A DNA stretch of 61,596 nt from Octopus bimaculoides (lineage: Eukaryota): the NCBI RefSeq assembly GCF_001194135.2, contig NC_068990.1:84777100-84838695 (forward strand). The letters are read 5' to 3'. How positions within the stretch are numbered: the first letter of the stretch is position 1; each line of letters begins with the position of its first letter. Below are positions 25,701 through 61,596 of the stretch, piece by piece. The notes under the pieces are model-generated. The model ran no database searches. It was not told where the DNA came from and worked only from the letters and a program-made list of their open reading frames with translations. The translations under genes and the position numbers were made by a program.

Positions 25701-28700
25701 TCTTATCTTTGGTTAATATCTAATTAAACCTCTTGAATATATGAAAAAAAATTGTTGGATTAATTAAAGAAACAAAATAGGCAGGCAAACAATTTTTTTA
25801 AACCAACATCTTGTGAATTTTAACAGGTAGAAAATTTCTCCAGTTTTGATTGGTATTCATGAGAAACATACTTGATTAATGCTTGTTTTAATTAAAAAAA
25901 GATTCAAGCTACTGTGGCTGTAAAGAAAGTCCTACACTGTTATCTAAAGTAAACAAATATAGCTTCTATCATTCCAGCAGTTGAGGACAACAATAATAAT
26001 CCTTTCTACTATAGGGACAAGGCCAGAAATTTTGAAGGGGTGCTAGTTGATTACATCAGTCCAGAGTTCAACTGGTACTTATTTTATTAACCTCCTAAGA
26101 ATGAGAGGCAAAGCCAGCCTCAGTTGAAATTGAATTCTTGGGTGACATCAAGTCATAAAACCCTCAAGCAAACACTGCACTGAAAAGTCAACAAGATAAT
26201 TTCTACATGGTCATTCAACTTGTGAGAAATAAACAGCTAAGTCACCTTCAAATTACACTCAACCATCTTAAAAAAGAATGACACACTGAATAGGGTAATA
26301 TGCAAGCATCCAGGCCATGTCAACATCTGAGGCTGGTCTCTTCCCTTCTTCCAATCTATCCAAATCCCTGACAAAGATCATGGATGTTTAATTAAGAGGG
26401 AAGGGTAGTGCTCAGCACACTTTTCAGATTTCCAAAACTTGTCGGAGGTTAGGAAGGTATCCTCAGAGGAGACTGAATATTTGCAACAGACTGGACTCTA
26501 CTGAGGGTCAGTAGAATCGGGTGTCTTTCTCAGACACATAACACAATGGTAGTAATAAGACTTGAACTCATGGTCATAATATCTCAAACTGAACACTTCC
26601 AATGAACCAAATAAAGAAAAAGAAAACAACAGTTACCCCAGCATTTGTTTTACACTAGCTCCACATGAAGATTTATTCTTGCTATAGAAATTGTTTTTTC
26701 CAAGAGATAAAATATTTTGCATCTTCTCATTTGCACATGCAAGGAAGTTATCCCCATTNNNNNNNNNNNNNNNNNNNNNNNNNNNNNNNNNNNNNNNNNN
26801 NNNNNNNNNNNNNNNNNNNNNNNNNNNNNNNNNNNNNNNNNNNNNNNNNNNNNNNNNNNNNNNNNNNNNNNNNNNNNNNNNNNNNNNNNNNNNNNNNNNN
26901 NNNNNNNNNNNNNNNNNNNNNNNTGTTATTGTTGTTGTTGGCACTCTGCCGCTTACGACGTCGAGGGTTCCAGTTGATCCGATCAACAGAACAGCCTGCT
27001 TGCGAAATTAATGTGCAAGTGGTTGAGCACTTCACAGACACGTGTATCCTTAATGTAGTTCTCGGGGATATTCAGCATGATACAGTGTGACAAGGCTGGC
27101 CCTTTGAATTACATGCACAACAGAAACAGGAAGTAAGAGTGAGAGAAAGTTGTGGTGGAAGAGTACAGCAGGGTTCGCACCATCCCCTGCCAGAGCCTCG
27201 TGGAGCTTGAGGTGTTTTTGCTCAATAAACACTCACAACACCCGGTCTGGGAATCGAAACCGCGATCCAATGACTGCGAGTCCGCTGCCCTAATCACTGG
27301 GCCATTGCGCCTCCACAATACAATGAGTAAAGTAGTTCTATAAACCGAATAACTGAAACACTCATCATCAAAACTAACAAGGAATCTATTAACTCTAATC
27401 CATTAATTTCATAGTTAATACTTATCACAATGAACCATTCAGTGACGCGTGAAATCTTTCTTTCAGATCAAATGTCCAATAATGCTGATGTTCACTAATC
27501 CATAATAATAATAACGAGAGGGTATTCATAACAGGGTTCTTGTGCTCATGTCTACATGATACCTAGACAAGATAGCTTCATGTGGTCAATGTTTTTAATT
27601 GGGTCACATACAAGTTTGTCTAAATAGGTTCCAAGATTGATTTCTTTTCCAGATTTTCATTTTTTAAATTTCTCAAAATTGCATTTCCTTTAACACCTCA
27701 TGAATATGCTTTTTTTTCCCAACCAAAATAAAGGAAATTAGCAAAAAAACAAGTTATTCCTAATAATAACAATTATTTATTTAAAAAAAAAATTAAAACA
27801 TCTCTTAATCAAACAATTTCATGCAAAGTATAACCACAAATTCATTTACTTTGAAAGACACATGGGCGATTCTTTGGCTCCCTCATCAAACTGCTTAACT
27901 TCTTTCTTCCGTACCATTTTGGATTTCAATGTATTATCAAGTTTTGAGTTTTCTTTACCACTGCAAACAAATAATATCAAATAAATATATTTATGTCTGT
28001 GGTTACTTCAAGTTTTATCCATATTTCAAAATTTAAGAACAACTCGTTTTTAGAGGTGAAAATTAAAAAAGTTTATTGCTTGTATCTATATTGATTATGT
28101 ATTGGGTCATCCCATTTTGTATCTACATTGATTATGTATTGGGTCATCCCATTTTGTATCTACATTGATTATGTATTGGGTCATCCCAATTTGTATCTAC
28201 ATTGATTATGTATTGGGTCATCCCATAAATAATGGGATTTTTTTCAATTGCATGAACTAAAAGTCGGAGGGGGAAGGGATAAACCACCTGCATCAACTTG
28301 CTATAAAAGCAAGTAGTAATTTTACCTAGTACTTATTACTAGTGTAAATTTTGAAAAGTGCAGTTCGATTTAATAGTTATTTTTTCAAAGCTATAATGGA
28401 AGTGGCAAAGGAGCATATTCAGCATATTTTGCTTTATGAGTTCAATAAAGATAACGATGTAACAGAAAGTGTGAAGAATATTAATGCAGTATATGGGGAT
28501 CGGAAAATAAGCATAAGCCAGTGTCAACAGTGGTTCCAGAAATTCCAAGCCGGAAACTACATGCATGCAAACATAGAAAAGGGCTGTGAAAGTGATGATA
28601 TACATTTCAAGAGGGGCAGATAAAAGAGATTTACCGGTAAGCTTGGAGAGTTATCCTTTCAGCAGAGACATTAAATGTCTTGTTTAATAAAGGAGTAGTA

Positions 28701-31290
28701 GCACTAACTTCTGCTCGGTTGATTGGCGCTGAAATGTATAGAAATACCATTAATTGTCTATATAATTGCATAAACACTTATGTTGGTTATATTTCAGATG
28801 GAAATCTCATGGAAAATTAACTGAAAACATTTGTTTCATTAAGCAATTCATTACCATATTCCTATTGAAATATGGAAACTTTGTTTCAAAAAAGGTAAAA
28901 AGATAAAATTAACTGTAAAAACAATATGAAGGAGACATTGCAAGCAAGAAGTGTCATCTCTCAACTGACTGAAATGCCAAATACAATTTAAAAGACAGAA
29001 AAAAGCTTACTTTTCCTGGCATTGCTATTTTTGTTATATTCTTCAAAGAAATCAGTGATTTTTGGTATTAAATGATCATCAGGATTAAAATGCACTAAAA
29101 GCCCATCAACAAATTCCAGTAGAAGCCGTTTCTTAAAAATGAATCGTCTGATGTTAGTCCGAATCAACTAGAAACATTAACAGAAAAAGTTAAGAAATTA
29201 ATTTTAAAAAATAGAAAAAAGTTCATTAGAAGACAAATCAAAGAGTTATGTAAAATAGTGTTTTCTTTAAGCATTATGTCAAATTTGGAAGAAACGGTAA
29301 GGTATTTGTGGTGCTCACTGTATTGAACCTAGTAAGGTGGAAATGTAAAATTTACACTAGTGACAAACTAAAAACCTAAGGATAGTGGATTATTTTAGCC
29401 TTGATCTGCTTCATTGTATGAATCACTTCCATTCATTCAAGTCAATATAATATTCAGACATAACACATTACCAATAAGTTTTGGGCTCAGCTATCAGTGC
29501 TACACTAAACTCTTAATATTTTATTGCATTAATAAATCCAGTCACTGCATCTGAGGATAGGCTAAAATGCAGAGTTCAAACATGGATAAATATACACACA
29601 GACCAGCCTAATTCCCTTCTTGCAGGTAGAGGAATTTAATTATGAACAAAAATTCATTTCACACCTTAACAGAATATGATATTAATGGAACCTCAATGAT
29701 TTATACAGGGTGTCCACAAGGTCTGGGTACATGGAGTAAATAAAATCATAACATAAACAGTTAAATATAAGAAATAATTTCTTAAAGTATGTGTTAATCC
29801 CCATGTGGGTACATGGAGTAAATAAAATCATAACAAACAATTAAATATAAGAAATAATAATTTCTTAAAGTATGTGTTAATCCCCATGCACCCAGACTTT
29901 GTGGACACCCTGTATACATACATTTTCATGTGTGTATGTCTAAGTACATAATTTATGTATTTACATCTGTACATGTGTGTACTAATGTATGTACAGATTT
30001 TATGTGCATGTACGTATGTAAGCATTTATAATTTTTAAATCAAAGGTGAACTTACAGCATGTATCTTTCTGTTGCTTTATTAAACCCCATTTTTGCATAT
30101 TATACCCACCTCCCCCTTTTTCACTTTTTTTTTTATCACTTTCTATCTCACTCCACCTCAAAGATATAATGCACAAACTCTCTCTTATTCTGTTTACATT
30201 AGTAGAACATTGAATATAGACAGACAAAGATCTTTGGAAAAAAGACAAAATTCCTCCTCATACCCTACTATCTTCAATGATTCATGGAATTTTGAAACAT
30301 TTTGTTTTTCTACATACAACCCAAAATTAATCACCCAAAAGTTTGTCAGTGTAAATGGAAACTTTTTTTATACATATATTTTCTTTTTATGTCTTGTCTA
30401 TTTGGATTATAGATTTCACTTTGAATTGAGTGATAAATGCTAAAAATCAAATGTACTGAAAATAAATTTTTGCTAAATGTAACAAAACAAACACTACTCT
30501 CTTTTACTTGTTTCAGTCATTTAGTCGAGAAAATCGACCCCAGGACTAACTCTTTGTAAGCCAAGTACTTATTCTATCGGTCTCTTTTGCTGAACCGCTA
30601 AGTTACGGGAACATAAACACACCACCATTGGTTGTCAAGCGATGTGGGGGGGGGGACAAATACAGGCACACAAACACACACTATACATATATACGACAGG
30701 CTTCTTTCAGTTTCCGTCTACCGAATCCACTCACAAAGCTTTGGTTGGCCTAAGGCTATAGCAGATTTTGACAGTAAGATAGGATTTTTGGATATTTGGC
30801 TGCTACTTCTAAGCACTCAAGTAACCACATATAGGCTGTCTAACTGGTAGAAATCTTGCTAATAGAACAGTCTAATAGTGCTGGTGTTAAGCAGGATGGC
30901 TAACTGTATCACCAACAAAATCCACTGGTTATTAATGTCATGAAATTTTGATGGAAGGTTTTAAGTTAGATCACTTCAAAACAAGGAAATTAGGGTCATA
31001 GAATCAGGGATAGTGGTTTCAGACAGGTTAGTAACAAAGGGGTGTTAATGAGATCCTGAAAGCTTTGAATGGTGGCATTCATTCAATCTGTCCAAATAAC
31101 TTGAAGAATAAATACTTACCTTAAATATCAAAGCTGGGTAAACCTTATTGGTACTGAACATCACATTACAGCACCAAACATTGTTGGTGTTCTTTAGATT
31201 AAGGGTCCCAGACTTCCAACCAATATTGCCAGTCTTTTGTGTATAATATTTAATGGAACCAGACCATTCAAGGGTATCTGGAAGCTTCAT
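8700..31290 (-). CDS. USP37: Ubiquitin carboxyl-terminal hydrolase 37-like (USP26/29/37 family), 22 coding exons, about 862 aa
   Basis: Exons (minus): 31290-31120, 29167-29011, 28728-28635, 27960-27850, 25643-25509, 24627-24496, 23610-23484, 23169-22985, 21896-21831, 21669-21550, 21082-20924, 19285-19214, 18666-18546, 17430-17365, 16363-16303, 15526-15308, 13363-13212, 12262-12205, 11847-11738, 11150-11081, 9566-9428, 8763-8700. Phases chain without a stop (2589 nt). N-terminal PH-like region (GSIKYYTQKTGNIGWKSG), Cys box GLTNMGNTCYLNAILQSL, QDAHE, RLPRVLILHLKRY, UIM-like SEEERMKLAIENSLQ and EEEDLKKAKAMSL, NKEN, His box GHYLSEV..WYSFDD..GYIFFY. Exons in the disordered middle are less certain than the catalytic ones. 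Confidence 0.93.
13479..13598. repeat. About 120-bp foldback/MITE-like inverted repeat in a (TA)n tract
   Basis: About 50-bp arms (ataatttagagaaaaaccactat..gaagaatata and its reverse complement) with 2 mismatches and a short spacer. Confidence 0.85.
14010..15296 (-). mobile_element. 5'-truncated RTE-type LINE (RT C-terminus, PHD-type finger, 3' end), interrupted by N gap 14297-14875
   Basis: SLSELEERFKVWKQGLESKGLRVNLAKLKILIS, C4-H-C3 finger, then after a frameshift GEKLEVVDSFRYLGD. 3' end with (gat)n tail at about 14010. Confidence 0.9.
22801..22876. repeat. 19-bp minisatellite x4 (gagataatagacagaggaa) within a (GA)n tract (22735-22930)
   Basis: Four consecutive units read directly; the last unit is slightly degenerate. 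Confidence 0.9.
24847..25407 (-). mobile_element. Helitron 3' remnant (PIF1-like helicase C-terminus and terminal hairpin/CTRR)
   Basis: IMLLRNLDPSHLCNGTRLIV..VFIPKIPLIP..FPVKLSF..KSQGQ..FSHGQLYVA..NIVYPEVL with stops and frameshifts, then ggcagtgccgggt and CTGG|T at about 24847-24870. Confidence 0.85.
26925..27316 (-). mobile_element. tRNA-derived SINE, family C
   Basis: Reverse-complement copy of the element at 60324-60704 (A-box TGGCCCAGTG, B-box-like GGTTTCGATTCCC, (aac)n tail). Confidence 0.85.
28080..28227. repeat. 37-bp tandem repeat x4 made of host flank + TA + start of mariner TIR
   Basis: Unit ttgtatctacattgattatg-TA-ttgggtcatcccatt at 28080, 28117, 28154 and 28191; the fourth unit runs into the full TIR. 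Confidence 0.92.
28213..28560 (+). mobile_element. Mariner (Mos1/Hsmar-like) 5' half: left TIR and transposase N-terminus
   Basis: TA + ttgggtcatcccataaataatg. Translation MEVAKEHIQHILLYEFNK..INAVYGDRKISISQCQQWFQKFQAGNY, after which similarity ends. Confidence 0.88.
29706..29912. mobile_element. Tc1/mariner-type MITE with TA target duplication and an internal tandem duplication
   Basis: TA-cagggtgtccacaaggtctgggtacatgg ... ccatgcacccagactttgtggacaccctg-TA; an approximately 80-bp internal unit is present twice. Confidence 0.85.
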
Positions 31291-32814
31291 ACTGATGGTG
31301 CCAGGTGAATGAGCTGCAATTCTGAAACAAAAAAGTGCCTATAAAAATAACATGTTTACAAGCAGGACTTGTAGAAATTACTTGATTATTTCGAGAACTA
31401 TAAAATGATCAAAAGTTTATAGAGAACTATGAAATATATAATTTCTTTTGGAATTGATTTCGTTCAAACCTTTGATGCTTTAAATGGTGTAAAAGCACAA
31501 ATACATCATCATTGTTTAATGTCTACTTTCCATGCTAGCATGGGTTGGACGATTTGACTGAGGACTGGCGAACCAGGTGGCTACACCAGGCTCCAATCTG
31601 ATCTGGCAGAGTTTTAAAATGGTCATGATTGGAACACGTTGACCATAAACCCGCAGAGTCAAGAATGTCCTGGAGTAAACTAACAACAACCTCTGTTGAC
31701 ACAATGGCTAGACTCCTTAAATAACTTGTGTGTGCACAAACACAAACATGCAATCTGACCATTGATTTGTTTGATCTCTGGGTGTGAAGTAAGATAATGT
31801 ACAATTAATACAAGTTTAAGTAGTTTGATTTATAAACATTACAGTTGTCATTCCTCTTTCCATCATGACTACAACTATTAACTGCCCTCAACTCTATCAC
31901 CATGTCAATTACCACCACCACCACTTCTACTACTACTGACCACCACTCTTTATTAGATTTACAAAAAGGTTTCTCAGACCAATATCATTACACTGAAGTG
32001 GTTTAGATCAATGTAATGTATCCAATCAAAACATGGTTTTTAATGCAAATAGCATTTTACAAACAGGAAGAAGTATATCAGTTTTAGCTGATCGTCCAAG
32101 TTAATATTGCACACATATGTATGTTATTAGAAATATATAGATTCTATGTTGATCTTGATATACATCAATAGAATTGCAGAAAAGACAGCAAACACAGTTT
32201 AACTTTATAAAACAAATTTGTCATCATTTTAACAACCATCTTTCTACGCTAGCATGAGTCAGAGTTCCATTTAAATAACCAATACTCTCTACACTATATA
32301 CTGAGTACTCTCTTCCTCTTTCATTTAGAAACTGCAACATTTGAATGCATGAATGAGCAGAATTCAAATTTTGTGTATCTGTATACACAGATACACAGAT
32401 GTTGAATTATGTTAAACCAATGAGAGTGGGGTGCATTGTACAAGTTGTAGAGCAGATGGTTGATTGAGACTGAGTGTTCATCCTGTAACTCATGTTATAT
32501 GCCACCATTAAAGTTCAAGCAAGAGCTGAAGACCGGCAGAGGTGTGAAACTCAAGTTGTGAGATAAGCATTCAGTTTCCGTCGGCTCTATATATAAAGGG
32601 AGTAAGAGAGAGGAAGGAAACACTTGACTCAACATCTATCTTGTAGAAAATAAAACCACAGCCTAAGATGTTAAACATTGTATTGTGCTTAAGCACTTTG
32701 TTATATATTTCGCCAAAACTTAGAGAAAGAGTAAAAAACTTAGAAAACCACTTAATCTTCTCTGAACCACAAGAATTGATAATTAATTCAGATTTATATA
32801 GTAATAATGCCCTC

Positions 32815-33228
32815 ATCATCATCGTTTAACGTCCGCTTTCTGTGCTAGCATGGGTTGGACGATTTGACTGAGGACTGGTGAACCAGATGGCTACTCCAGG
32901 CTCCAATCTGATTTGGCAGAGTTTCTACAGCTGGATGCCATTCCTAACGCCAACCACTCAGAGAGTGCAGTGGGTGCTTTTACGTGCCACCGGCACGAAG
33001 GCCAGTCAGGTGGTACTGGCAACGGCCACGCTCAAAATGGTGTATTTTATGTGGTACCTGCACAGGAGCCAGTCCAGCGGCACTGGCAATGACCTCGCTC
33101 AAATGTCTTTACACGTGCCAGGAAGGCTACGCTAGGCACAGGTGCCACTATGATTTTGCTTGCCCCAATAGGTCTTCACAAGCCGAGTTTAGTGTCCAAT
33201 GAAGGAGACGACGTTGGCATACACAACT
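32815..33228 (-). mobile_element. RTE-tail repeat (LINE 3' end or non-autonomous derivative)
   Basis: catcatcatcgtttaacgtccgc.. shared with the other RTE 3' ends. Shorter copies at about 31505-31620, 54775-54960, 55375-55640 and 58070-58200. Confidence 0.8.
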
Positions 33229-33319
33229 AATATAATACCAGTCTTTTGCTGTGAGTTTTCTCCTGTAGATGCAACTAAACTCATCACTGCAAACCATGCA
33301 AATGCGAAAATACCTCCAA

Positions 33320-34261
33320 ATTGGAAACCACAACCTAGAAGACGAGACTCAACCTGGAAGATCTGTAGAGCTCGACGAGGACGTCCTGCAAACCCTGGTG
33401 GAAGAAAATCCCATCGTAACTGTTGAGGAACTAGCAGAGAAGCTTGGATTTGGTCATTCAACCATTCATTGACATCTGTGTGCCATCGGAAAAGTCAACA
33501 AATTGGGTCAATGGCTTCCTCACAAACTTTCCAAGCCTAATTGCAAGCAGAGAGTGAATGTGTGCTCTTCTTTGCTGTCACACCTCACAAATGAACCTCT
33601 TTTGAACCGAATAGTGACTGGTAACAAGAAATGGGTTCTCAATAAAAATATCAAGTGCCAAAGACAGGGTAGGGAAAGGAGAAACACTGGCACCCCAGGC
33701 TAAAGAAGGTCTTCACCCACGTATGGTGTTGTTATCTGTTTGGTGGGATATGAAAGATTTAGTCCACTTTGAACTTTTAAACTCAAACCAAATGAAAAAG
33801 ATCTACAGTGAGCAGCTTGAGTGGCTTAAGTCAGTGCTAGAAGAAAAGCAACCATCTTTGTTTTCAAGATGAAAGGAATTCTTCCATCAGGATAATGCTT
33901 GGCTACATACGAGGATGATATTCCAAAGATTAGAGTAGTATGAATGGGAAACAATGCTCCACCCACCATATTTGTTGGACATTGCCTCATCTGATTATCA
34001 TTCATTTCACATTCTTCAAAATCATTTGGATGGAAAAAATATGAATTCTGTAGATAAGGTAAGAGCAATACTGGAGGAATATTTTTCTTCATGGACAAGT
34101 GAATTTTGGAAGAGGGGATTTGCAAGTCTACCAGATAGTTGGAAGAGCATTGTAGAAATTGAAGGAGAGTATAATTTAGATTAAAAAAGAACTTTGTTTA
34201 TCTTGATTTTGAAAAATAAAAGAAGTATAAAAATAAAAACATTATTTATGGGATGACCCAA
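33320..34261 (+). mobile_element. Mariner 3' part: decayed DD34D-type transposase and right TIR
   Basis: GNHNLEDETQPGRSVELDEDVLQTLVEENP..WLPHKLS..IVTGNKKW..HQDNA..HPPYLLDIASSDYHSF..W..IVEIEGEY with stops and frameshifts. Ends cattatttatgggatgacccaa-TA, the exact reverse complement of the first 22 bp of the left TIR at 28213. Confidence 0.92.
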
Positions 34262-37225
34262 TAGAATATGCCTGCTCAAGAGGGAAAGAACCCAAAACTA
34301 CATGGTTTTAAGTGAACTTCTTAAATCAAGCAGCCATACCTTTGCCTTTATATAAACATATATAATTTAAGGCTAACTGGAGAGAACTACAACCAGAGTT
34401 TGTGTTCATTGGCAATATGACTCATCCAAAGTAGAATATCAGTTTCAAATCAGAATTTAATGCAAAACAAATCCAAAAACAATAGCACCATCATTTTTAT
34501 TGTCTACTTTTCTATGCTTGAATGGGTCAGACAAAATTCATTGAAACAGACTTTCTATGGTCGACTGCTCATCTTGTTGAAAATTCTCAATTGTTTTCCA
34601 GCAGAGATGTATTTCTTTGGAGTTCACTAATCACAAAAATAGCTAATCGCTTGCTCTTCTCAGTCTTAATATTTCCAATTTAACCTGTTTTTCATGAAAG
34701 ATTACAAATGACCACTACCAATTGTATGACAGTGAAATTTATCTACAATTAGTCCACAATGACATGACAAGTATATAAACACACGATGGACTTCTTCCAG
34801 TTACTGTGAAATCAACAGCCTTCAGTCAAGCAAGGTGAGTTTATAAATCAATTCAGTTGTCTTATAAATGTTAATGCTCAGATAAATGAGAGCAATGTGC
34901 GTTTTTCAAATCTCATATATCTTTGTATAAAATTGTCCAGTTGTTGCCATGGCTACTAGGATGCTTAGATGTAAAATAACCACTAGTATGAGAACACAAG
35001 AGAAGTGTTTTATAAAAAGATATGTAAAAGATCACAAACAGACAATGAAATTGTAAATCTAAATGACCTATAAACTCTTAGGGGATTTAGTTGAACTCCA
35101 GGTCAGCCTAGCAATCAACATCTTTCCAGATATGGCCATCCCATCTTTTGAGAGTGTAGCTAAGAATACATTAGCTAACATTTTCTATTGAATATGATAG
35201 TGTGATTTCAAGACAAAATATTGCTGACTTGACAAAGTAATGAAATCTATAAAGGTTACAGAAGATCGAAATAATTGTAACTGACCCCAGATCTACCAAC
35301 TAGTTTTTACTTCAGAATGGAGTGAACTAAGCTAAATTCTATAGAAAATATAGTTCAGAGCTATCATCACTATTATCATTAAAATTATTCGTCAACGACT
35401 GCTTGTCTTGATATTTGTCACCTGGGTACAAAGGCATTTGTCAAACTAGAAAATTATAGCATAATGAATTAACCCAGAGATATTCCGACATACGTATTTA
35501 ATATTTTTTGGAAGAGTGAAAGCTAGGAGTCGACTCAACGCAGAGTTTGACTTCAGAGTATAGAGGGACATAACTGACGAACATAAAACAATGCAATTAG
35601 TAAACTCGACTAAGGTCGAGCACAGAACCATTTCTTCGCCACACCACATGGCTTTCCCATCAACTACTAAATACGATGCGATTCAGTTTCGTGGATCCCT
35701 GATCAAGTTGTTGACAAACAGCAGGTACTTTTATTTACATGTTAAATAGAAAATATTACACACAACTAAGAACAAACGATTAGCCATTTTTTGAAGTGTC
35801 TTTCGTAAAATCTATTTCTCGTTCTAAATATATAATCAAAATATTCACAATCGCCCATAGTTAAACATGAAAAATCGAAAGTACTAAGTAGCTGAATGAA
35901 AATTAGTTTCAATTTAAATTTTCACTTCCTCAAAATTATGATTGACCAATGTTCTTAGGATTCTCTATCGAAATAAGTGTTTTTAATAATTTAAAAGATC
36001 AATCAATGAAATTGTAAATAATCTAAATAACCTTTTAAACCCTTAGGGGATTTTTTCTTGAACTCTAGGTTAGCCTAGCAATCAACATCTTTCCAGATAT
36101 GACTATCCCATCTATTGAGAGTGTAGCTAAGATTACATTACATTTTAAAGACTACAGCTAAGATACACACATACCCAATGTTTTATTATTAACGAAATTA
36201 TAAATGTTGAAAGAAAAACTACAGAATTTCAGGTCGAATAGTCCAGAATAGATTGTGAAAGCGGATGTAAATATTTTGATATTTTATAATTTGTGAAATG
36301 AGAAGTAGTAATTATCGTAGTATGTGTAATCAAAAAATTGACCTCGTTTAATTAATTTACAAAAGCAAAGTTAAATGACCGAGCATTTTACAGTGAATAT
36401 CATGTTAACACGTGGGCAGTTACTGTTGCCAAGATAAAACATTGTTACATAGTATGTGTGTGGAGTGTAATACGACAGAGCAAAAAGCAGGGTAGGTCGG
36501 ACAGCTGGGTTCAACAGATCGTTTCCAGTAAGTGTCCGTAGTCAAGACTAAACTTCTGACTATGGACTCTGAAAACATAAAATGACAGTCCACCTAGTTG
36601 TAAACGTGATCAGTTTCTCGATAGCTACAGTACTGAATGAGAGAGAGAGAGACTTATATTCACAAATGAAAACAAAGTTCTCAACGAAAACCTTTTTTCT
36701 GAATAAAAGACAGCTAGAACAGTTTGCTCAACCAAGTCTGATATAGCGTTAGAAAATGACCTACTGAAAAGCTTCATATGAAATCGGGAATGCTTTTGTA
36801 ATAACCATGACTACCTTCTGTACATTTCAACAAATTAGTCATGATCAACAGTATCATGTTTACATTCACTTTCCATGTTATGGGCTAGACGGGATATTTC
36901 GAAGCAACGGGTTGGTGTCAGAAAGATACCAACCCGTTGCCTTCTGCGACACAGGGTTTCGGTCTGTCTTAACGAAGGGAAGTACCAACGACTCTCTAAG
37001 TGCCTTCAAAACAATGTGACAGAAAGTGATCAAGTTATCCTTAGATCTGAGACTTGACCAGTATGTTCACAACAAAATGGACTCCGCTAAAGAGAACTAA
37101 ACAAAAAAAAAAAAAAAAAAAAAAAAAAAGCCAAATGGTGGTTTTAAACTAGGCGATGGATTAAGCATACGCGCGAAGAACAGAAACGTCCCCTCTGGCG
37201 GGTTTCGAATCAGTTTCTGTATATT

Positions 37226-41990: not shown

Positions 41991-42373
41991 GAGGCTGTGT
42001 GGTAAGTAGCTTGCTTACAAACCACATGGTTCCAGGTTCAGTCCCACTGTGTGGAACCTTGGGCAAGTGTCTTCTACTATAGCCTCGGGCCGATCAAAGC
42101 CTTGTGAGTGGATTTGGTAGACGGAAACTGAAAGAAGCCCGTCGTATATATGTATATGTATATATGTGTGTTTGTGTTTGACCCCTCCCCCCCACAACAC
42201 CGCTTGACAACCAATGTTGGTGTGTTTACGTCCCCGTAGCTTAGCGGTTCAGCAAAAGAGACTGATAGAATAAGTACTAAGCTTACAAAGAATAAGTCCT
42301 GGGGTCGATTTGCTCGACTAAATGTGGTGTTCCAGCATGGCCGCAGTCAAATGAATGAAACAAGTAAAAGAGT
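41991..42373 (+). mobile_element. tRNA-derived SINE, family B, with CORE-like cttgggcaag motif and internal (TA/TG)n
   Basis: Head gctgtgtggtaag..ggttcagtccc. Homologous copies at about 350-520, 3150-3370, 15930-16060, 30500-30760, 43300-43450, 50850-51010 and 61237-61596. Resembles published octopus SINEs; family name not verified. Confidence 0.85.
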
Positions 42374-42817
42374 ATTAAACATTTTGTTTTAAATAATCAA
42401 GGAAAAAAGTGAAATAATTACCCAGAAATATTTGACCTGTATAATTTTACTAAAATCTAACATAAAAATATATATTGTTTAGAGTAGTGATTCTCAAAGT
42501 GGGTCCAATCAAAATAACGGGTTCTGCAAATAACATTTAATAAAAATTAATTTATTAAAATATAGTATTCACTATTTTCATAATTTACACTTTTTCTTTA
42601 TATATATATAAAACTAAGTGGCACTTTGTTGATTATGACTATGAGAGACGTACAAATCACTAATTTAGAGAATAAATAATTCAGAGACACCATCTGCATA
42701 AAAACAATTGTTAAAAGTTAGTATTAAAATATTTAATGTAGAAAACAAACAGTTAATTAGAAATTATTATCCTCACTGTATAATTCTCTCTCAACATTTT
42801 AACAATCACCACATTAA

Positions 42818-61236: not shown

Positions 61237-61596
61237 TACTCTTTACGTTTTTACTTGTTTCAGTCATTTGACTGTGGCCATGCTGGAGCACCGCCTTTAG
61301 TCGAGAAAATTGACTCCAGGACTTATTCTTTGTAAGTCAAGTACTTATTCTATCGGTCTCTTTTGCCGAACTGCTAAGTTACGGGGACATAAATACACCG
61401 GCATCGGTTGTCAAGCGATGTTGAGTGGACAAACACAGACACACAAACATATACACACACACATACACATATACATATACATATATACAACGGGCTTCTT
61501 TCAGTTTCCATCTACCAAATCCACTCACAAGGCTTTGGTCGGCCCGAGGCTATAGTAGAAGACACTTGCCTAAAGTGCCACGCAGTGGGACTGAAC
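61237..61596 (-). mobile_element. tRNA-derived SINE, family B, running off the window edge
   Basis: Reverse complement of the 41991-42373 element. Confidence 0.88.

What the first reader, a model, noticed from the sequence alone, without database searches (positions are those of the whole stretch)
28213..34261. Two complementary halves of one mariner bracket the first three coding exons of USP37, forming a TIR-bounded 6-kb cassette
Seen: the left TIR and transposase N-terminus end at ..FQAGNY (28560). The remainder starts at the same position of the protein, GNHNLEDE.. (about 33320), in the same orientation, and ends in a right TIR identical over 22 bp, each end with TA. The halves sum to about 1.29 kb, the canonical mariner length, with only about 10-18 bp overlap. 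Between them lie about 4.75 kb of host DNA with USP37 exons 31321-31120 (start codon), 29167-29011 and 28728-28635 (PH-like domain) in correct order. Inference: a Pack-like composite that a trans-acting mariner transposase could excise or move, exon-shuffling a PH-domain module. Possible origins: a rearrangement splitting one element; two local copies that lost their inner halves because direct repeats around essential exons are deleterious; or mis-assembly.
Basis: partly seen in the sequence, partly recalled or inferred. Interest (0 to 1): 0.75.

Follow-up and report, generated by a model that had tools for sequence, protein, structure and literature searches.

The report
Two separate mariner relics, not one
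The two "halves" flanking the first USP37-like exons of Octopus bimaculoides are leftovers of two different, long-dead mariner insertions, one of which is still whole in Octopus vulgaris, so this is ordinary transposon decay and not a split element or a proven gene-carrying cassette.

Summary
The sequence facts hold. A 348-bp left mariner end (28213-28560) and a 946-bp right end (33316-34261) lie in the same orientation. Their 22-bp inverted termini are identical and each has an outer TA. They bracket 4,755 bp that carry three spliceable coding exons of a USP37-like gene, whose product has a PH fold.

"One mariner" is wrong. The orthologous O. vulgaris locus has a whole, degenerate mariner at the upstream site, with its own left part and its own left flank. 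It also has the intron-3 left end. These are therefore two independent insertions older than the species split.

In O. bimaculoides a 1.6-2.3 kb deletion removed the left part of the upstream copy plus adjacent DNA. Its end-joined junction is 33315|33316. This deletion happens to end 18 bp before the point where the intron copy stops. A random endpoint would land that close about 3% of the time.

The exons are in place and collinear with the rest of the gene and with O. vulgaris. They are not a captured copy. I found no sign of movement, no intact transposase and no breakpoint hotspot.

One loose end remains: a second, diverged copy of the start-codon exon is listed for O. bimaculoides (UniRef A0A0L8I962), but its DNA could not be retrieved.

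Verdict: ordinary, low interest.

The parts
28080..28226 (+). 37-bp x 4 tandem array covering left flank + TA + first 13 bp of the terminus. TIR tips lie at 28102, 28139, 28176 and 28213. The array is specific to O. bimaculoides.
   Evidence: TRF period 37, 4.0 copies, 97% matches. TIR-tip positions. O. vulgaris has a single unit.
28213..28560 (+). M1 relic (L1): left terminus, 5' UTR and the HTH_48 coding part of a mariner, 3'-truncated. It lies in intron 3 of the USP37-like gene, 75 bp from the exon-3 donor.
   Evidence: Pfam HTH_48 1-50/50. 92.2% identical to the orthologous copy in O. vulgaris (L004 29995-29686) but only 87% to the left part of the upstream O. vulgaris copy.
28213..28234 (+). 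Left 22-bp terminal inverted repeat, preceded by TA (28211-28212).
28561..33315 (.). 4,755 bp of resident host DNA (introns, three coding exons, SINE fragments). Collinear with O. vulgaris L004 29006->15487.
   Evidence: No second copy in the window.
28635..28728 (-). USP37-like coding exon 3.
   Evidence: AG/GT borders and 100% match to P0001.
29011..29167 (-). USP37-like coding exon 2 (second half of the PH fold).
31120..31321 (-). Start-codon exon (ATG at 31290; an acceptor AG precedes 31321, so a 5' UTR exon lies further upstream).
   Evidence: 90.1% nt identity to O. vulgaris, with 7 synonymous and 6 non-synonymous codon differences.
33315..33316 (.). Deletion junction specific to O. bimaculoides: ..GAAAATACCT|CCAAATTGGAAACCAC... 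It joins the host DNA to the interior of the upstream mariner with 1 bp of microhomology.
   Evidence: Three-way comparison with O. vulgaris X-end (..ATACCT|GATAATTG) and M2 (..AAATT|CCAAACTGG). The 1,974-bp Z segment plus about 340 bp of the element are absent from the window.
33316..34261 (+). M2 relic (R2): a 5'-truncated mariner holding the second HTH, the catalytic domain (first D now N, D-34-D kept, 3 stops and 1 frameshift), the 3' UTR and the right terminus.
   Evidence: Pfam Transposase_1. A single alignment runs through the terminus into the right flank: 33777-35115 = L004 12489-11183. 94.2% identical to the O. vulgaris ortholog over the last 414 bp.
34240..34261 (-). Right 22-bp terminal inverted repeat, followed by TA (34262-34263).
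   Evidence: The flank TAGAATATGCCTGCTCAAGAGGGA is the same in O. vulgaris.
27849..27959 (-). Coding exon 4 of the same gene, outside the bracketed interval. It shows that the enclosed exons are in register with the rest of the gene.

Best explanation
Two copies of one mariner family inserted independently, in the same orientation, into the 5' region of the USP37-like gene. This happened before O. bimaculoides and O. vulgaris separated. M1 went into intron 3 and M2 upstream of the start-codon exon. Both are now dead. M1 survives only as its left 348 bp. M2 stayed whole in the O. vulgaris lineage. In the O. bimaculoides lineage one end-joining deletion of about 1.6-2.3 kb removed M2's left ~330 bp together with the host DNA next to it. 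That deletion happens to end 18 bp before the element coordinate at which M1 is truncated, so the two relics look like complementary halves of one element. The exons between them were never moved or captured. The structure has no demonstrated function.

Shown: two copies, orthology, the deletion and its junction, and the in-situ exons. Inferred: that the near-match of the breakpoints is chance, and that the deletion arose by non-homologous end joining.
For: - Orthology: the O. vulgaris locus L004 is collinear with window ~23.9-41 kb, including all four N-terminal exons and both flanks.
- Whole upstream element: the window's L1+R2 composite aligns to L004 13513-12711 as one ungapped-through-the-junction match, and on to 12009. 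O. vulgaris therefore has a whole 1,505-bp element there, including a ~220-bp insert.
- Different left flanks: M2's left flank is ..GGTCTCTGCA|TTGGG and M1's is ..GATTATGTA|TTGGG, so these are different target sites.
- M1 is present in both species: it sits at L004 29995-29686. L1_Obim is 92.2% identical to L1_Ovul but 87% to L2_Ovul, and the two L1 copies share private substitutions.
- Junction..ATACCT|CCAAATTGG.. equals the O. vulgaris host sequence joined to the M2 interior with 1 bp of microhomology. The Z segment is missing from the window.
- R2 and its right flank are orthologous across the terminus.
- The overlap in R2 matches O. vulgaris M2 at 19/21 positions but L1 at only 14/18.
- No hotspot seen: the other truncated family copies break elsewhere (L002 at ~547, L003 at ~899, M3 at ~864), none at position ~349.
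- All copies are degenerate. No intact transposase of the family turned up in the 5.8-billion-protein search.
Against: - The breakpoints match to within 18 bp. That has only about a 3% chance (37/1,286) if the deletion endpoint were random, and I found no mechanism that would make it non-random.
- The history of the L1|X junction (28560|28561) is unresolved. O. vulgaris has a SINE plus 108 unique bp there and lacks the last 38 bp of L1, so M1's truncation could be ancestral or also specific to O. bimaculoides.
- Only one comparison species was reachable, with no outgroup.
- The O. bimaculoides assembly could not be checked against independent reads.
Confidence: 0.9

Rival explanations
1. One mariner was split in two by a rearrangement or by insertion of 4.75 kb of host DNA, the 10-18 bp overlap being a target-duplication-like scar.
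For: The pieces are collinear and nearly exactly complementary against family references, with identical termini.
Against: - O. vulgaris has the right piece as part of a whole element with its own left part and its own flank, and separately has the left piece in intron 3.
- The overlap differs at 4/18 positions, and in R2 it follows the M2 lineage.
- The enclosed DNA is the resident gene segment.
Confidence: 0.01
2. The arrangement is an assembly artefact of the short-read O. bimaculoides assembly.
For: The assembly has many gaps (6 N runs in the window). The junction ORFs were not found in any independent assembly on record.
Against: - There is no gap between 26924 and 40098.
- Both junctions join unique, non-repeated sequence with at most 1 bp of overlap. 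Repeat-induced collapse does not produce that.
- Order and orientation of everything else match O. vulgaris.
Confidence: 0.03
3. The near-complementarity is not chance. Once M1 was reduced to its left part, the 350-bp direct repeat L1/L2 flanking essential exons was harmful (risk of recombinational loss of exons 1-3), and a deletion removing just L2 was favoured. Alternatively, a recombination intermediate between L1 and L2 resolved at the end of their homology.
For: The deletion removes almost exactly the stretch of M2 that is homologous to L1, leaving 18 bp. Chance gives only about 3%.
Against: - The junction shows 1-bp microhomology to unrelated host DNA, which is typical end joining and not a homology-guided product.
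- Selection against a 350-bp, ~5-10% diverged repeat 5-7 kb apart would be very weak.
- O. vulgaris has kept L1 and L2 in place.
- Selection would equally favour any larger deletion.
Confidence: 0.06
4. The 6-kb interval is (or, as L1..M2, was) a mobilisable composite or macrotransposon that has moved USP37 exons. The second copy of the start-codon exon in O. bimaculoides would be its product.
For: - The outer termini are intact and identical, in the correct relative orientation, each with TA.
- A diverged second copy of exon 1 (+8 aa of exon 2) exists in UniRef for O. bimaculoides (A0A0L8I962).
- Recently active Tc1/mariner families are reported in O. vulgaris (PMC13282606).
Against: - Both ends sit at orthologous sites in two species.
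- The second copy shares none of the five substitutions private to the window's exon 1, so it was not copied from the present cassette.
- All copies of this family that I saw are degenerate.
- From general knowledge, mariner transposition falls steeply with element length.
- Excision would delete the gene's start.
Confidence: 0.02

Closest known systems
Mos1/Himar1-type mariner elements (Tc1/mariner superfamily, DD34D), as degenerate and truncated genomic relics
   Same: About 1.29 kb long, ~22-bp terminal inverted repeats, TA target duplication, a Mos1-type HTH_48 N-terminus, Transposase_1 and a D-34-D spacing. Copies decay by stops, frameshifts and deletions.
   Different: Nothing unusual. 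The first catalytic D is N in the O. bimaculoides copy. The apparent 'split' comes from two copies.
Macrotransposons / alternative transposition by two closely linked Ac/Ds elements in maize (e.g. PMC4270019, PMC3260210)
   Same: The outer termini of two nearby same-family elements in direct orientation bound a stretch of host DNA that transposase could in principle treat as one element.
   Different: In maize the movement is observed and transposase is present. Here there is no active transposase and no evidence of movement. Both ends are fixed at orthologous sites in two species, and the elements are relics.
Pack-MULE / Pack-TYPE transduplicating elements of plants (own knowledge)
   Same: Termini of one DNA-transposon family enclosing host exons.
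   Different: Pack elements carry copies of gene fragments whose parent gene lies elsewhere. They were inserted as a unit and usually exist in several copies. Here the exons are the resident ones, the two ends arrived separately, and no further copy is shown.
Bacterial composite transposons (IS-bounded, e.g. IS26/Tn10 type; PMC4894685 for IS26)
   Same: Two copies of one insertion element flank cargo DNA.
   Different: Those use complete, active flanking elements and demonstrably move. Here only one inactive stump remains on each side.

Membership tests
mariner family (Tc1/mariner superfamily) | Short terminal inverted repeats with a TA target-site duplication | tested here: met
   22/22 identical termini at 28213 and 34261, TA outside each. 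The same termini occur in L002 and in O. vulgaris L1.
mariner family (Tc1/mariner superfamily) | Transposase with a Mos1-type paired HTH N-terminus and a DD34D catalytic domain | tested here: met
   HTH_48 E 2e-20 and Transposase_1 E 3.8e-12. The second and third D are 34 residues apart in the conceptual translation. The first D is N here but D in O. vulgaris M2. The ORF is broken.
single element split in two | Both pieces descend from one insertion event | tested here: not met
   O. vulgaris holds a whole element at the R2 site plus a separate L1 at the intron-3 site. The left flanks differ, and L1 clusters with L1, not with L2.
Pack-type (transduplicating) DNA transposon | The enclosed host sequence is a captured copy, with the parent gene elsewhere | tested here: not met
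   The exons are collinear with exon 4 and the UCH exons on the same strand, and with the O. vulgaris gene. There is no second copy in the window.
Pack-type (transduplicating) DNA transposon | The whole unit was inserted at once (one target duplication, an empty site in relatives) | tested here: not met
   Both ends are present at orthologous sites in O. vulgaris as parts of two separate elements. TA itself is uninformative.
Pack-type (transduplicating) DNA transposon | Several copies, or other evidence of mobilisation | tested here: inconclusive
   A diverged second copy of exon 1 exists (P0008), but its DNA context could not be fetched. It lacks the window copy's private substitutions.
macrotransposon / composite of two linked elements | Two same-family elements in direct orientation with intact outer termini around host DNA | tested here: met
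   The ancestral form was L1 ... whole M2.
macrotransposon / composite of two linked elements | A cognate active transposase is available | tested here: inconclusive
   Only fragments or degenerate copies were found. The octopus genome itself could not be searched. Active Tc1/mariner families of unknown relation are reported in O. vulgaris.
macrotransposon / composite of two linked elements | Observed excision or transposition of the unit | not testable with these tools
   This needs PCR or long-read screens. The comparative data show no movement since the species split.
USP37 (PH domain + UCH with inserted UIMs) | N-terminal PH-like domain followed by a UCH catalytic domain | tested here: met
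   AF2 model pLDDT 87, top PDB match 3U12 (USP37 PH domain), TM 0.70. The N-terminus is homologous to the N-termini of 820- and 1,003-aa UCH+UIM proteins. UCH exons lie downstream. Pfam and PDB sequence searches of the N-terminus alone were negative.

The most novel reading that the evidence does not exclude
The pair of outer mariner termini (today L1...R2, ancestrally L1...whole M2) has acted as a macrotransposon. On this reading the second, diverged copy of the USP37 start-codon exon recorded for O. bimaculoides (UniRef A0A0L8I962) is a transposed or duplicated product. That would be a natural animal case of mariner-mediated exon or PH-module mobilisation.
Probability: 0.03. Interest if true: 0.6.

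Novelty: already known. Interest (0 to 1): 0.1.

Why it matters
As it stands it matters little. It is a worked example of two decaying copies of one transposon family mimicking a single split element or a gene-carrying cassette. It also shows that one orthologous locus is enough to tell these readings apart.

It would matter if the termini had moved host exons, because DNA-transposon-mediated exon shuffling is documented mainly in plants. Nothing found here supports that. The only open thread is the unlocated second copy of exon 1.

Tried and rejected
- Other family copies in the window: none.
- TIR scans of the metagenome and viral collections to build a family census and test for a breakpoint hotspot: 0 hits in each. 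The hotspot test therefore rests on only 4-5 other copies.
- Independent confirmation of the two junctions by exact look-up of the ORFs that span them: nothing on record.
- A third octopus species for polarity: my last homology search used too strict an E-value cut-off and returned only a fish USP. P0002 itself was not on record, but its isoform P0007 gave the O. vulgaris locus.
- DNA for the second exon-1 copy, P0008: not on record.
- Pfam and PDB sequence searches of the N-terminal protein: negative. The fold search settled it.
- Whether the 108 unique bp next to the O. vulgaris SINE are a remnant of M1's 3' end: there is a weak AT-rich match to the last ~20 bp before the terminus (score 24-25), not above shuffles (6/500 shuffles reach the best score, which lies elsewhere). 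Inconclusive.
- Target duplication around that SINE, to date the junction: none recognisable.
- Single-event mechanisms that would yield L1-X-R2 from two whole copies or from one copy (unequal crossover, circle reintegration, inversions, tandem duplication, inside-out transposition, abortive gap repair): considered on paper. None gives this order and orientation with the resident exons retained.
Full report
**Source and gene**

The window is Octopus bimaculoides, assembly GCA_001194135.2, chromosome CM046610.1. Locus L001, fetched through the encoded protein, is 100% identical to the window.

- On the minus strand, 31290-31120 (ATG), 29167-29011 and 28728-28635 have canonical AG/GT borders.
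- They translate exactly to NCBI model LOC106871317 (P0001, 178 aa).
- A fourth coding exon lies at 27959-27849, to the left of the mariner piece.
- USP-type catalytic exons follow on the same strand from 24623 to 9427, in the order of human USP37.
- The N-terminal protein has no Pfam or PDB sequence match.
- It is homologous to the N-termini of 820- and 1,003-aa invertebrate proteins that carry UCH plus UIM motifs.
- An AlphaFold model of the exon 1-2 product (pLDDT 87) has seven strands plus a C-terminal helix. Its best PDB match is 3U12, the PH domain of USP37 (TM 0.70).

"USP37-like, PH-like N-terminus" is therefore supported.

**Checking the observation**

- The 22-mer TTGGGTCATCCCATAAATAATG occurs exactly twice in 61.6 kb, at 28213 (+) and 34261 (-). 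Chance predicts 0.02 occurrences. TA lies outside each copy.
- The left piece encodes a complete Mos1-type HTH_48 domain. The right piece carries Transposase_1 and a D-34-D spacing, with three stops, one frameshift and N in place of the first D.
- Against longer copies of the same family the two pieces are collinear and overlap by 9-10 bp in BLAST terms. The references were L002 from a JGI metagenome contig and L003 from another O. bimaculoides chromosome.
- No assembly gap lies between 26924 and 40098.

**The decisive comparison**

An isoform of the O. vulgaris orthologue (P0007) gave the orthologous locus L004 (GCA_951406725.2, 37.4 kb). It is collinear with window ~23.9-41 kb, including all four N-terminal exons and both outer flanks. 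Three results settle the origin.

1. The window's L1+R2 composite (1,286 bp) aligns to L004 13513-12711 in one piece, straight through the supposed break, and on to 12009. O. vulgaris therefore has a whole, degenerate 1,505-bp mariner at the upstream site. R2 and its right flank are orthologous to it across the terminus: one alignment covers 33777-35115, and the flank TAGAATATGCCTGC.. is the same.
2. O. vulgaris also has the left piece at the orthologous intron-3 site (L004 29995-29686).
3. The two left ends have unrelated flanks. L1 of O. bimaculoides is 92.2% identical to L1 of O. vulgaris but 87% to L2 of O. vulgaris, and the two L1 copies share private substitutions.

Two independent insertions, M1 and M2, therefore predate the species split. 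A recent repeat-annotation paper gives that split as 13-33 Myr, citing Huang et al. 2022 (PMC13282606).

**How the right piece arose**

The three relevant sequences are:
- O. bimaculoides: ..GCGAAAATACCT|CCAAATTGGAAACCACAACC..
- O. vulgaris host: ..GAGAAAATACCT|GATAATTGTATGG..
- O. vulgaris M2 interior..CACAAATT|CCAAACTGGAAACTACAACC..

The junction is at 33315|33316, with one base of microhomology. That is the signature of an end-joined deletion.

In O. vulgaris coordinates about 2.3 kb is missing. It consists of M2's left ~330 bp plus 1,974 bp of host DNA. Two SINE copies within that host DNA may be O. vulgaris-specific, which leaves at least ~1.6 kb. None of the unique part is in the window.

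With the true junction placed, R2 overlaps the end of L1 by 18 bp (TCCAAATTGGAAACCACA against TCCAAGCCGGAAACTACA, 14/18). In that stretch R2 follows the M2 lineage (19/21).

**The left junction**

L1 is bona fide mariner up to 28560. Host sequence begins at 28561, exactly where the O. vulgaris alignment resumes.

In O. vulgaris, L1 stops 38 bp earlier. It is followed by a ~560-bp tRNA-headed SINE and 108 unique bp. Without an outgroup I cannot say whether M1's truncation at 28560 is ancestral or also specific to O. bimaculoides. A weak, AT-rich resemblance of the 108 bp to the last bases of the element is not significant.

**Is the complementarity more than chance?**

If the deletion endpoint fell at random within a 1,286-bp element, it would land within 18 bp of M1's truncation point with probability of about 0.03.
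- I found no mechanism that would couple the two. The junction is not homology-guided.
- O. vulgaris has kept both L1 and L2.
- The other truncated family copies seen break elsewhere: L002 at ~547, L003 at ~899 and the O. vulgaris fragment M3 at ~864.

The sample is small. The TIR scans of the metagenome and viral collections that could have enlarged it found nothing. I read the near-match as coincidence picked out by a reader looking for patterns, and leave about 6% for a selective or recombinational cause.

**Function and mobility**

The enclosed 4,755 bp are the resident 5' part of the gene, not a captured copy. This fails a defining feature of Pack-type elements.

Formally, two intact outer termini in direct orientation resemble a macrotransposon, as described for linked Ac/Ds in maize (PMC4270019, PMC3260210). 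Against any actual movement:
- Both ends are fixed at orthologous sites in two species.
- All copies seen are degenerate.
- No intact transposase of the family turned up.
- Excision would remove the gene's start codon.

**Open thread**

The 90% cluster of the O. vulgaris protein contains a 65-aa O. bimaculoides entry, UniRef A0A0L8I962 (P0008). It is a second, diverged copy of exon 1 plus eight residues of exon 2.
- It differs from the window's exon at 7/57 residues and from O. vulgaris at 3/57.
- It shares none of the five changes private to the window copy.
- It is not encoded in the window, and its DNA could not be fetched.

It cannot be a recent product of the present cassette, but its genomic context should be examined.

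**Verdict**

The features are real, the headline interpretation is wrong, and what is there is ordinary: two mariner relics and a lineage-specific deletion.

Noticed in passing
window 28080-28226: A 37-bp unit repeated four times spans the left flank, the TA and the first 13 bp of the mariner terminus, so the TIR tip occurs four times in tandem (28102, 28139, 28176, 28213). O. vulgaris has a single unit, so the array arose in the O. bimaculoides lineage.
   Followed up: partly
not in window (UniRef A0A0L8I962, P0008): A second, diverged copy of the USP37-like start-codon exon (+8 aa of exon 2) is recorded for O. bimaculoides. It has 7/57 aa differences to the window copy and only 3/57 to O. 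vulgaris. Its genomic location and flanks are unknown.
   Followed up: partly
window 27846-27850 and gap 26759-26923; L004 27374/28910: Annotation splits the USP37-like gene into an N-terminal model (178 aa in O. bimaculoides, 153 aa in O. vulgaris) and a UCH model (713 and 784 aa). The 'stop' of exon 4 overlaps a good donor (AA|GTAAAT), and in O. bimaculoides an assembly gap follows, so the split is probably an annotation artefact.
   Followed up: partly
L004 10752-11177 (O. vulgaris); empty site at window 35115|35118: O. vulgaris carries a third fragment of the same mariner: the last ~420 bp, inverted, with the outer part of its terminus missing. It lies about 830 bp beyond M2 and is absent from O. 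bimaculoides. It is 92-93% identical to both R2 orthologues.
   Followed up: partly
window 41993-42379, 30520-30765, 61249-61596; L004 14427-15991, 17908-18294, 20966-21336, 29117-29685: An abundant ~390-bp SINE with a tRNA-like head (GGCTGTGTGGTAAGTAGC... ending AAGTAAAAGAGTA). The O. vulgaris locus has many more copies than the O. bimaculoides one. That includes one inside the intron-3 mariner relic and two in the segment deleted in O. bimaculoides.
   Followed up: partly
L002 1026-1571 (JGI metagenome 3300007190, contig Ga0103267_1034587): A ~550-bp internally deleted copy of the same mariner family, with the identical 22-bp terminus, sits on a metagenome contig. Octopus-type host DNA is apparently present in that sample. 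The contig is not in the scannable metagenome collection.
   Followed up: no
P0006 (UniRef A0A0L8HMH5, O. bimaculoides): A 484-aa C2-domain protein model ends in ~90 residues of this mariner's transposase C-terminus (71% identical to the window's R2). This is either an exonised fragment or a chimeric gene model.
   Followed up: no
L004 12490-12710: The whole upstream mariner of O. vulgaris carries a ~220-bp insertion at element position ~803 that is absent from the O. bimaculoides copy.
   Followed up: no
L004 10001-10072: The longer O. vulgaris isoform (P0007) starts in an extra upstream coding exon (MAGGYISQNVLLTTNKMRTNICQ). This exon lies beyond both mariner copies and has no counterpart in the window. 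The ~1.4-kb stretch L004 9277-10647 around it does not align to O. bimaculoides.
   Followed up: no
window 29724-29888: An 83-bp unit repeated twice (92% match) in the intron between coding exons 1 and 2.
   Followed up: no
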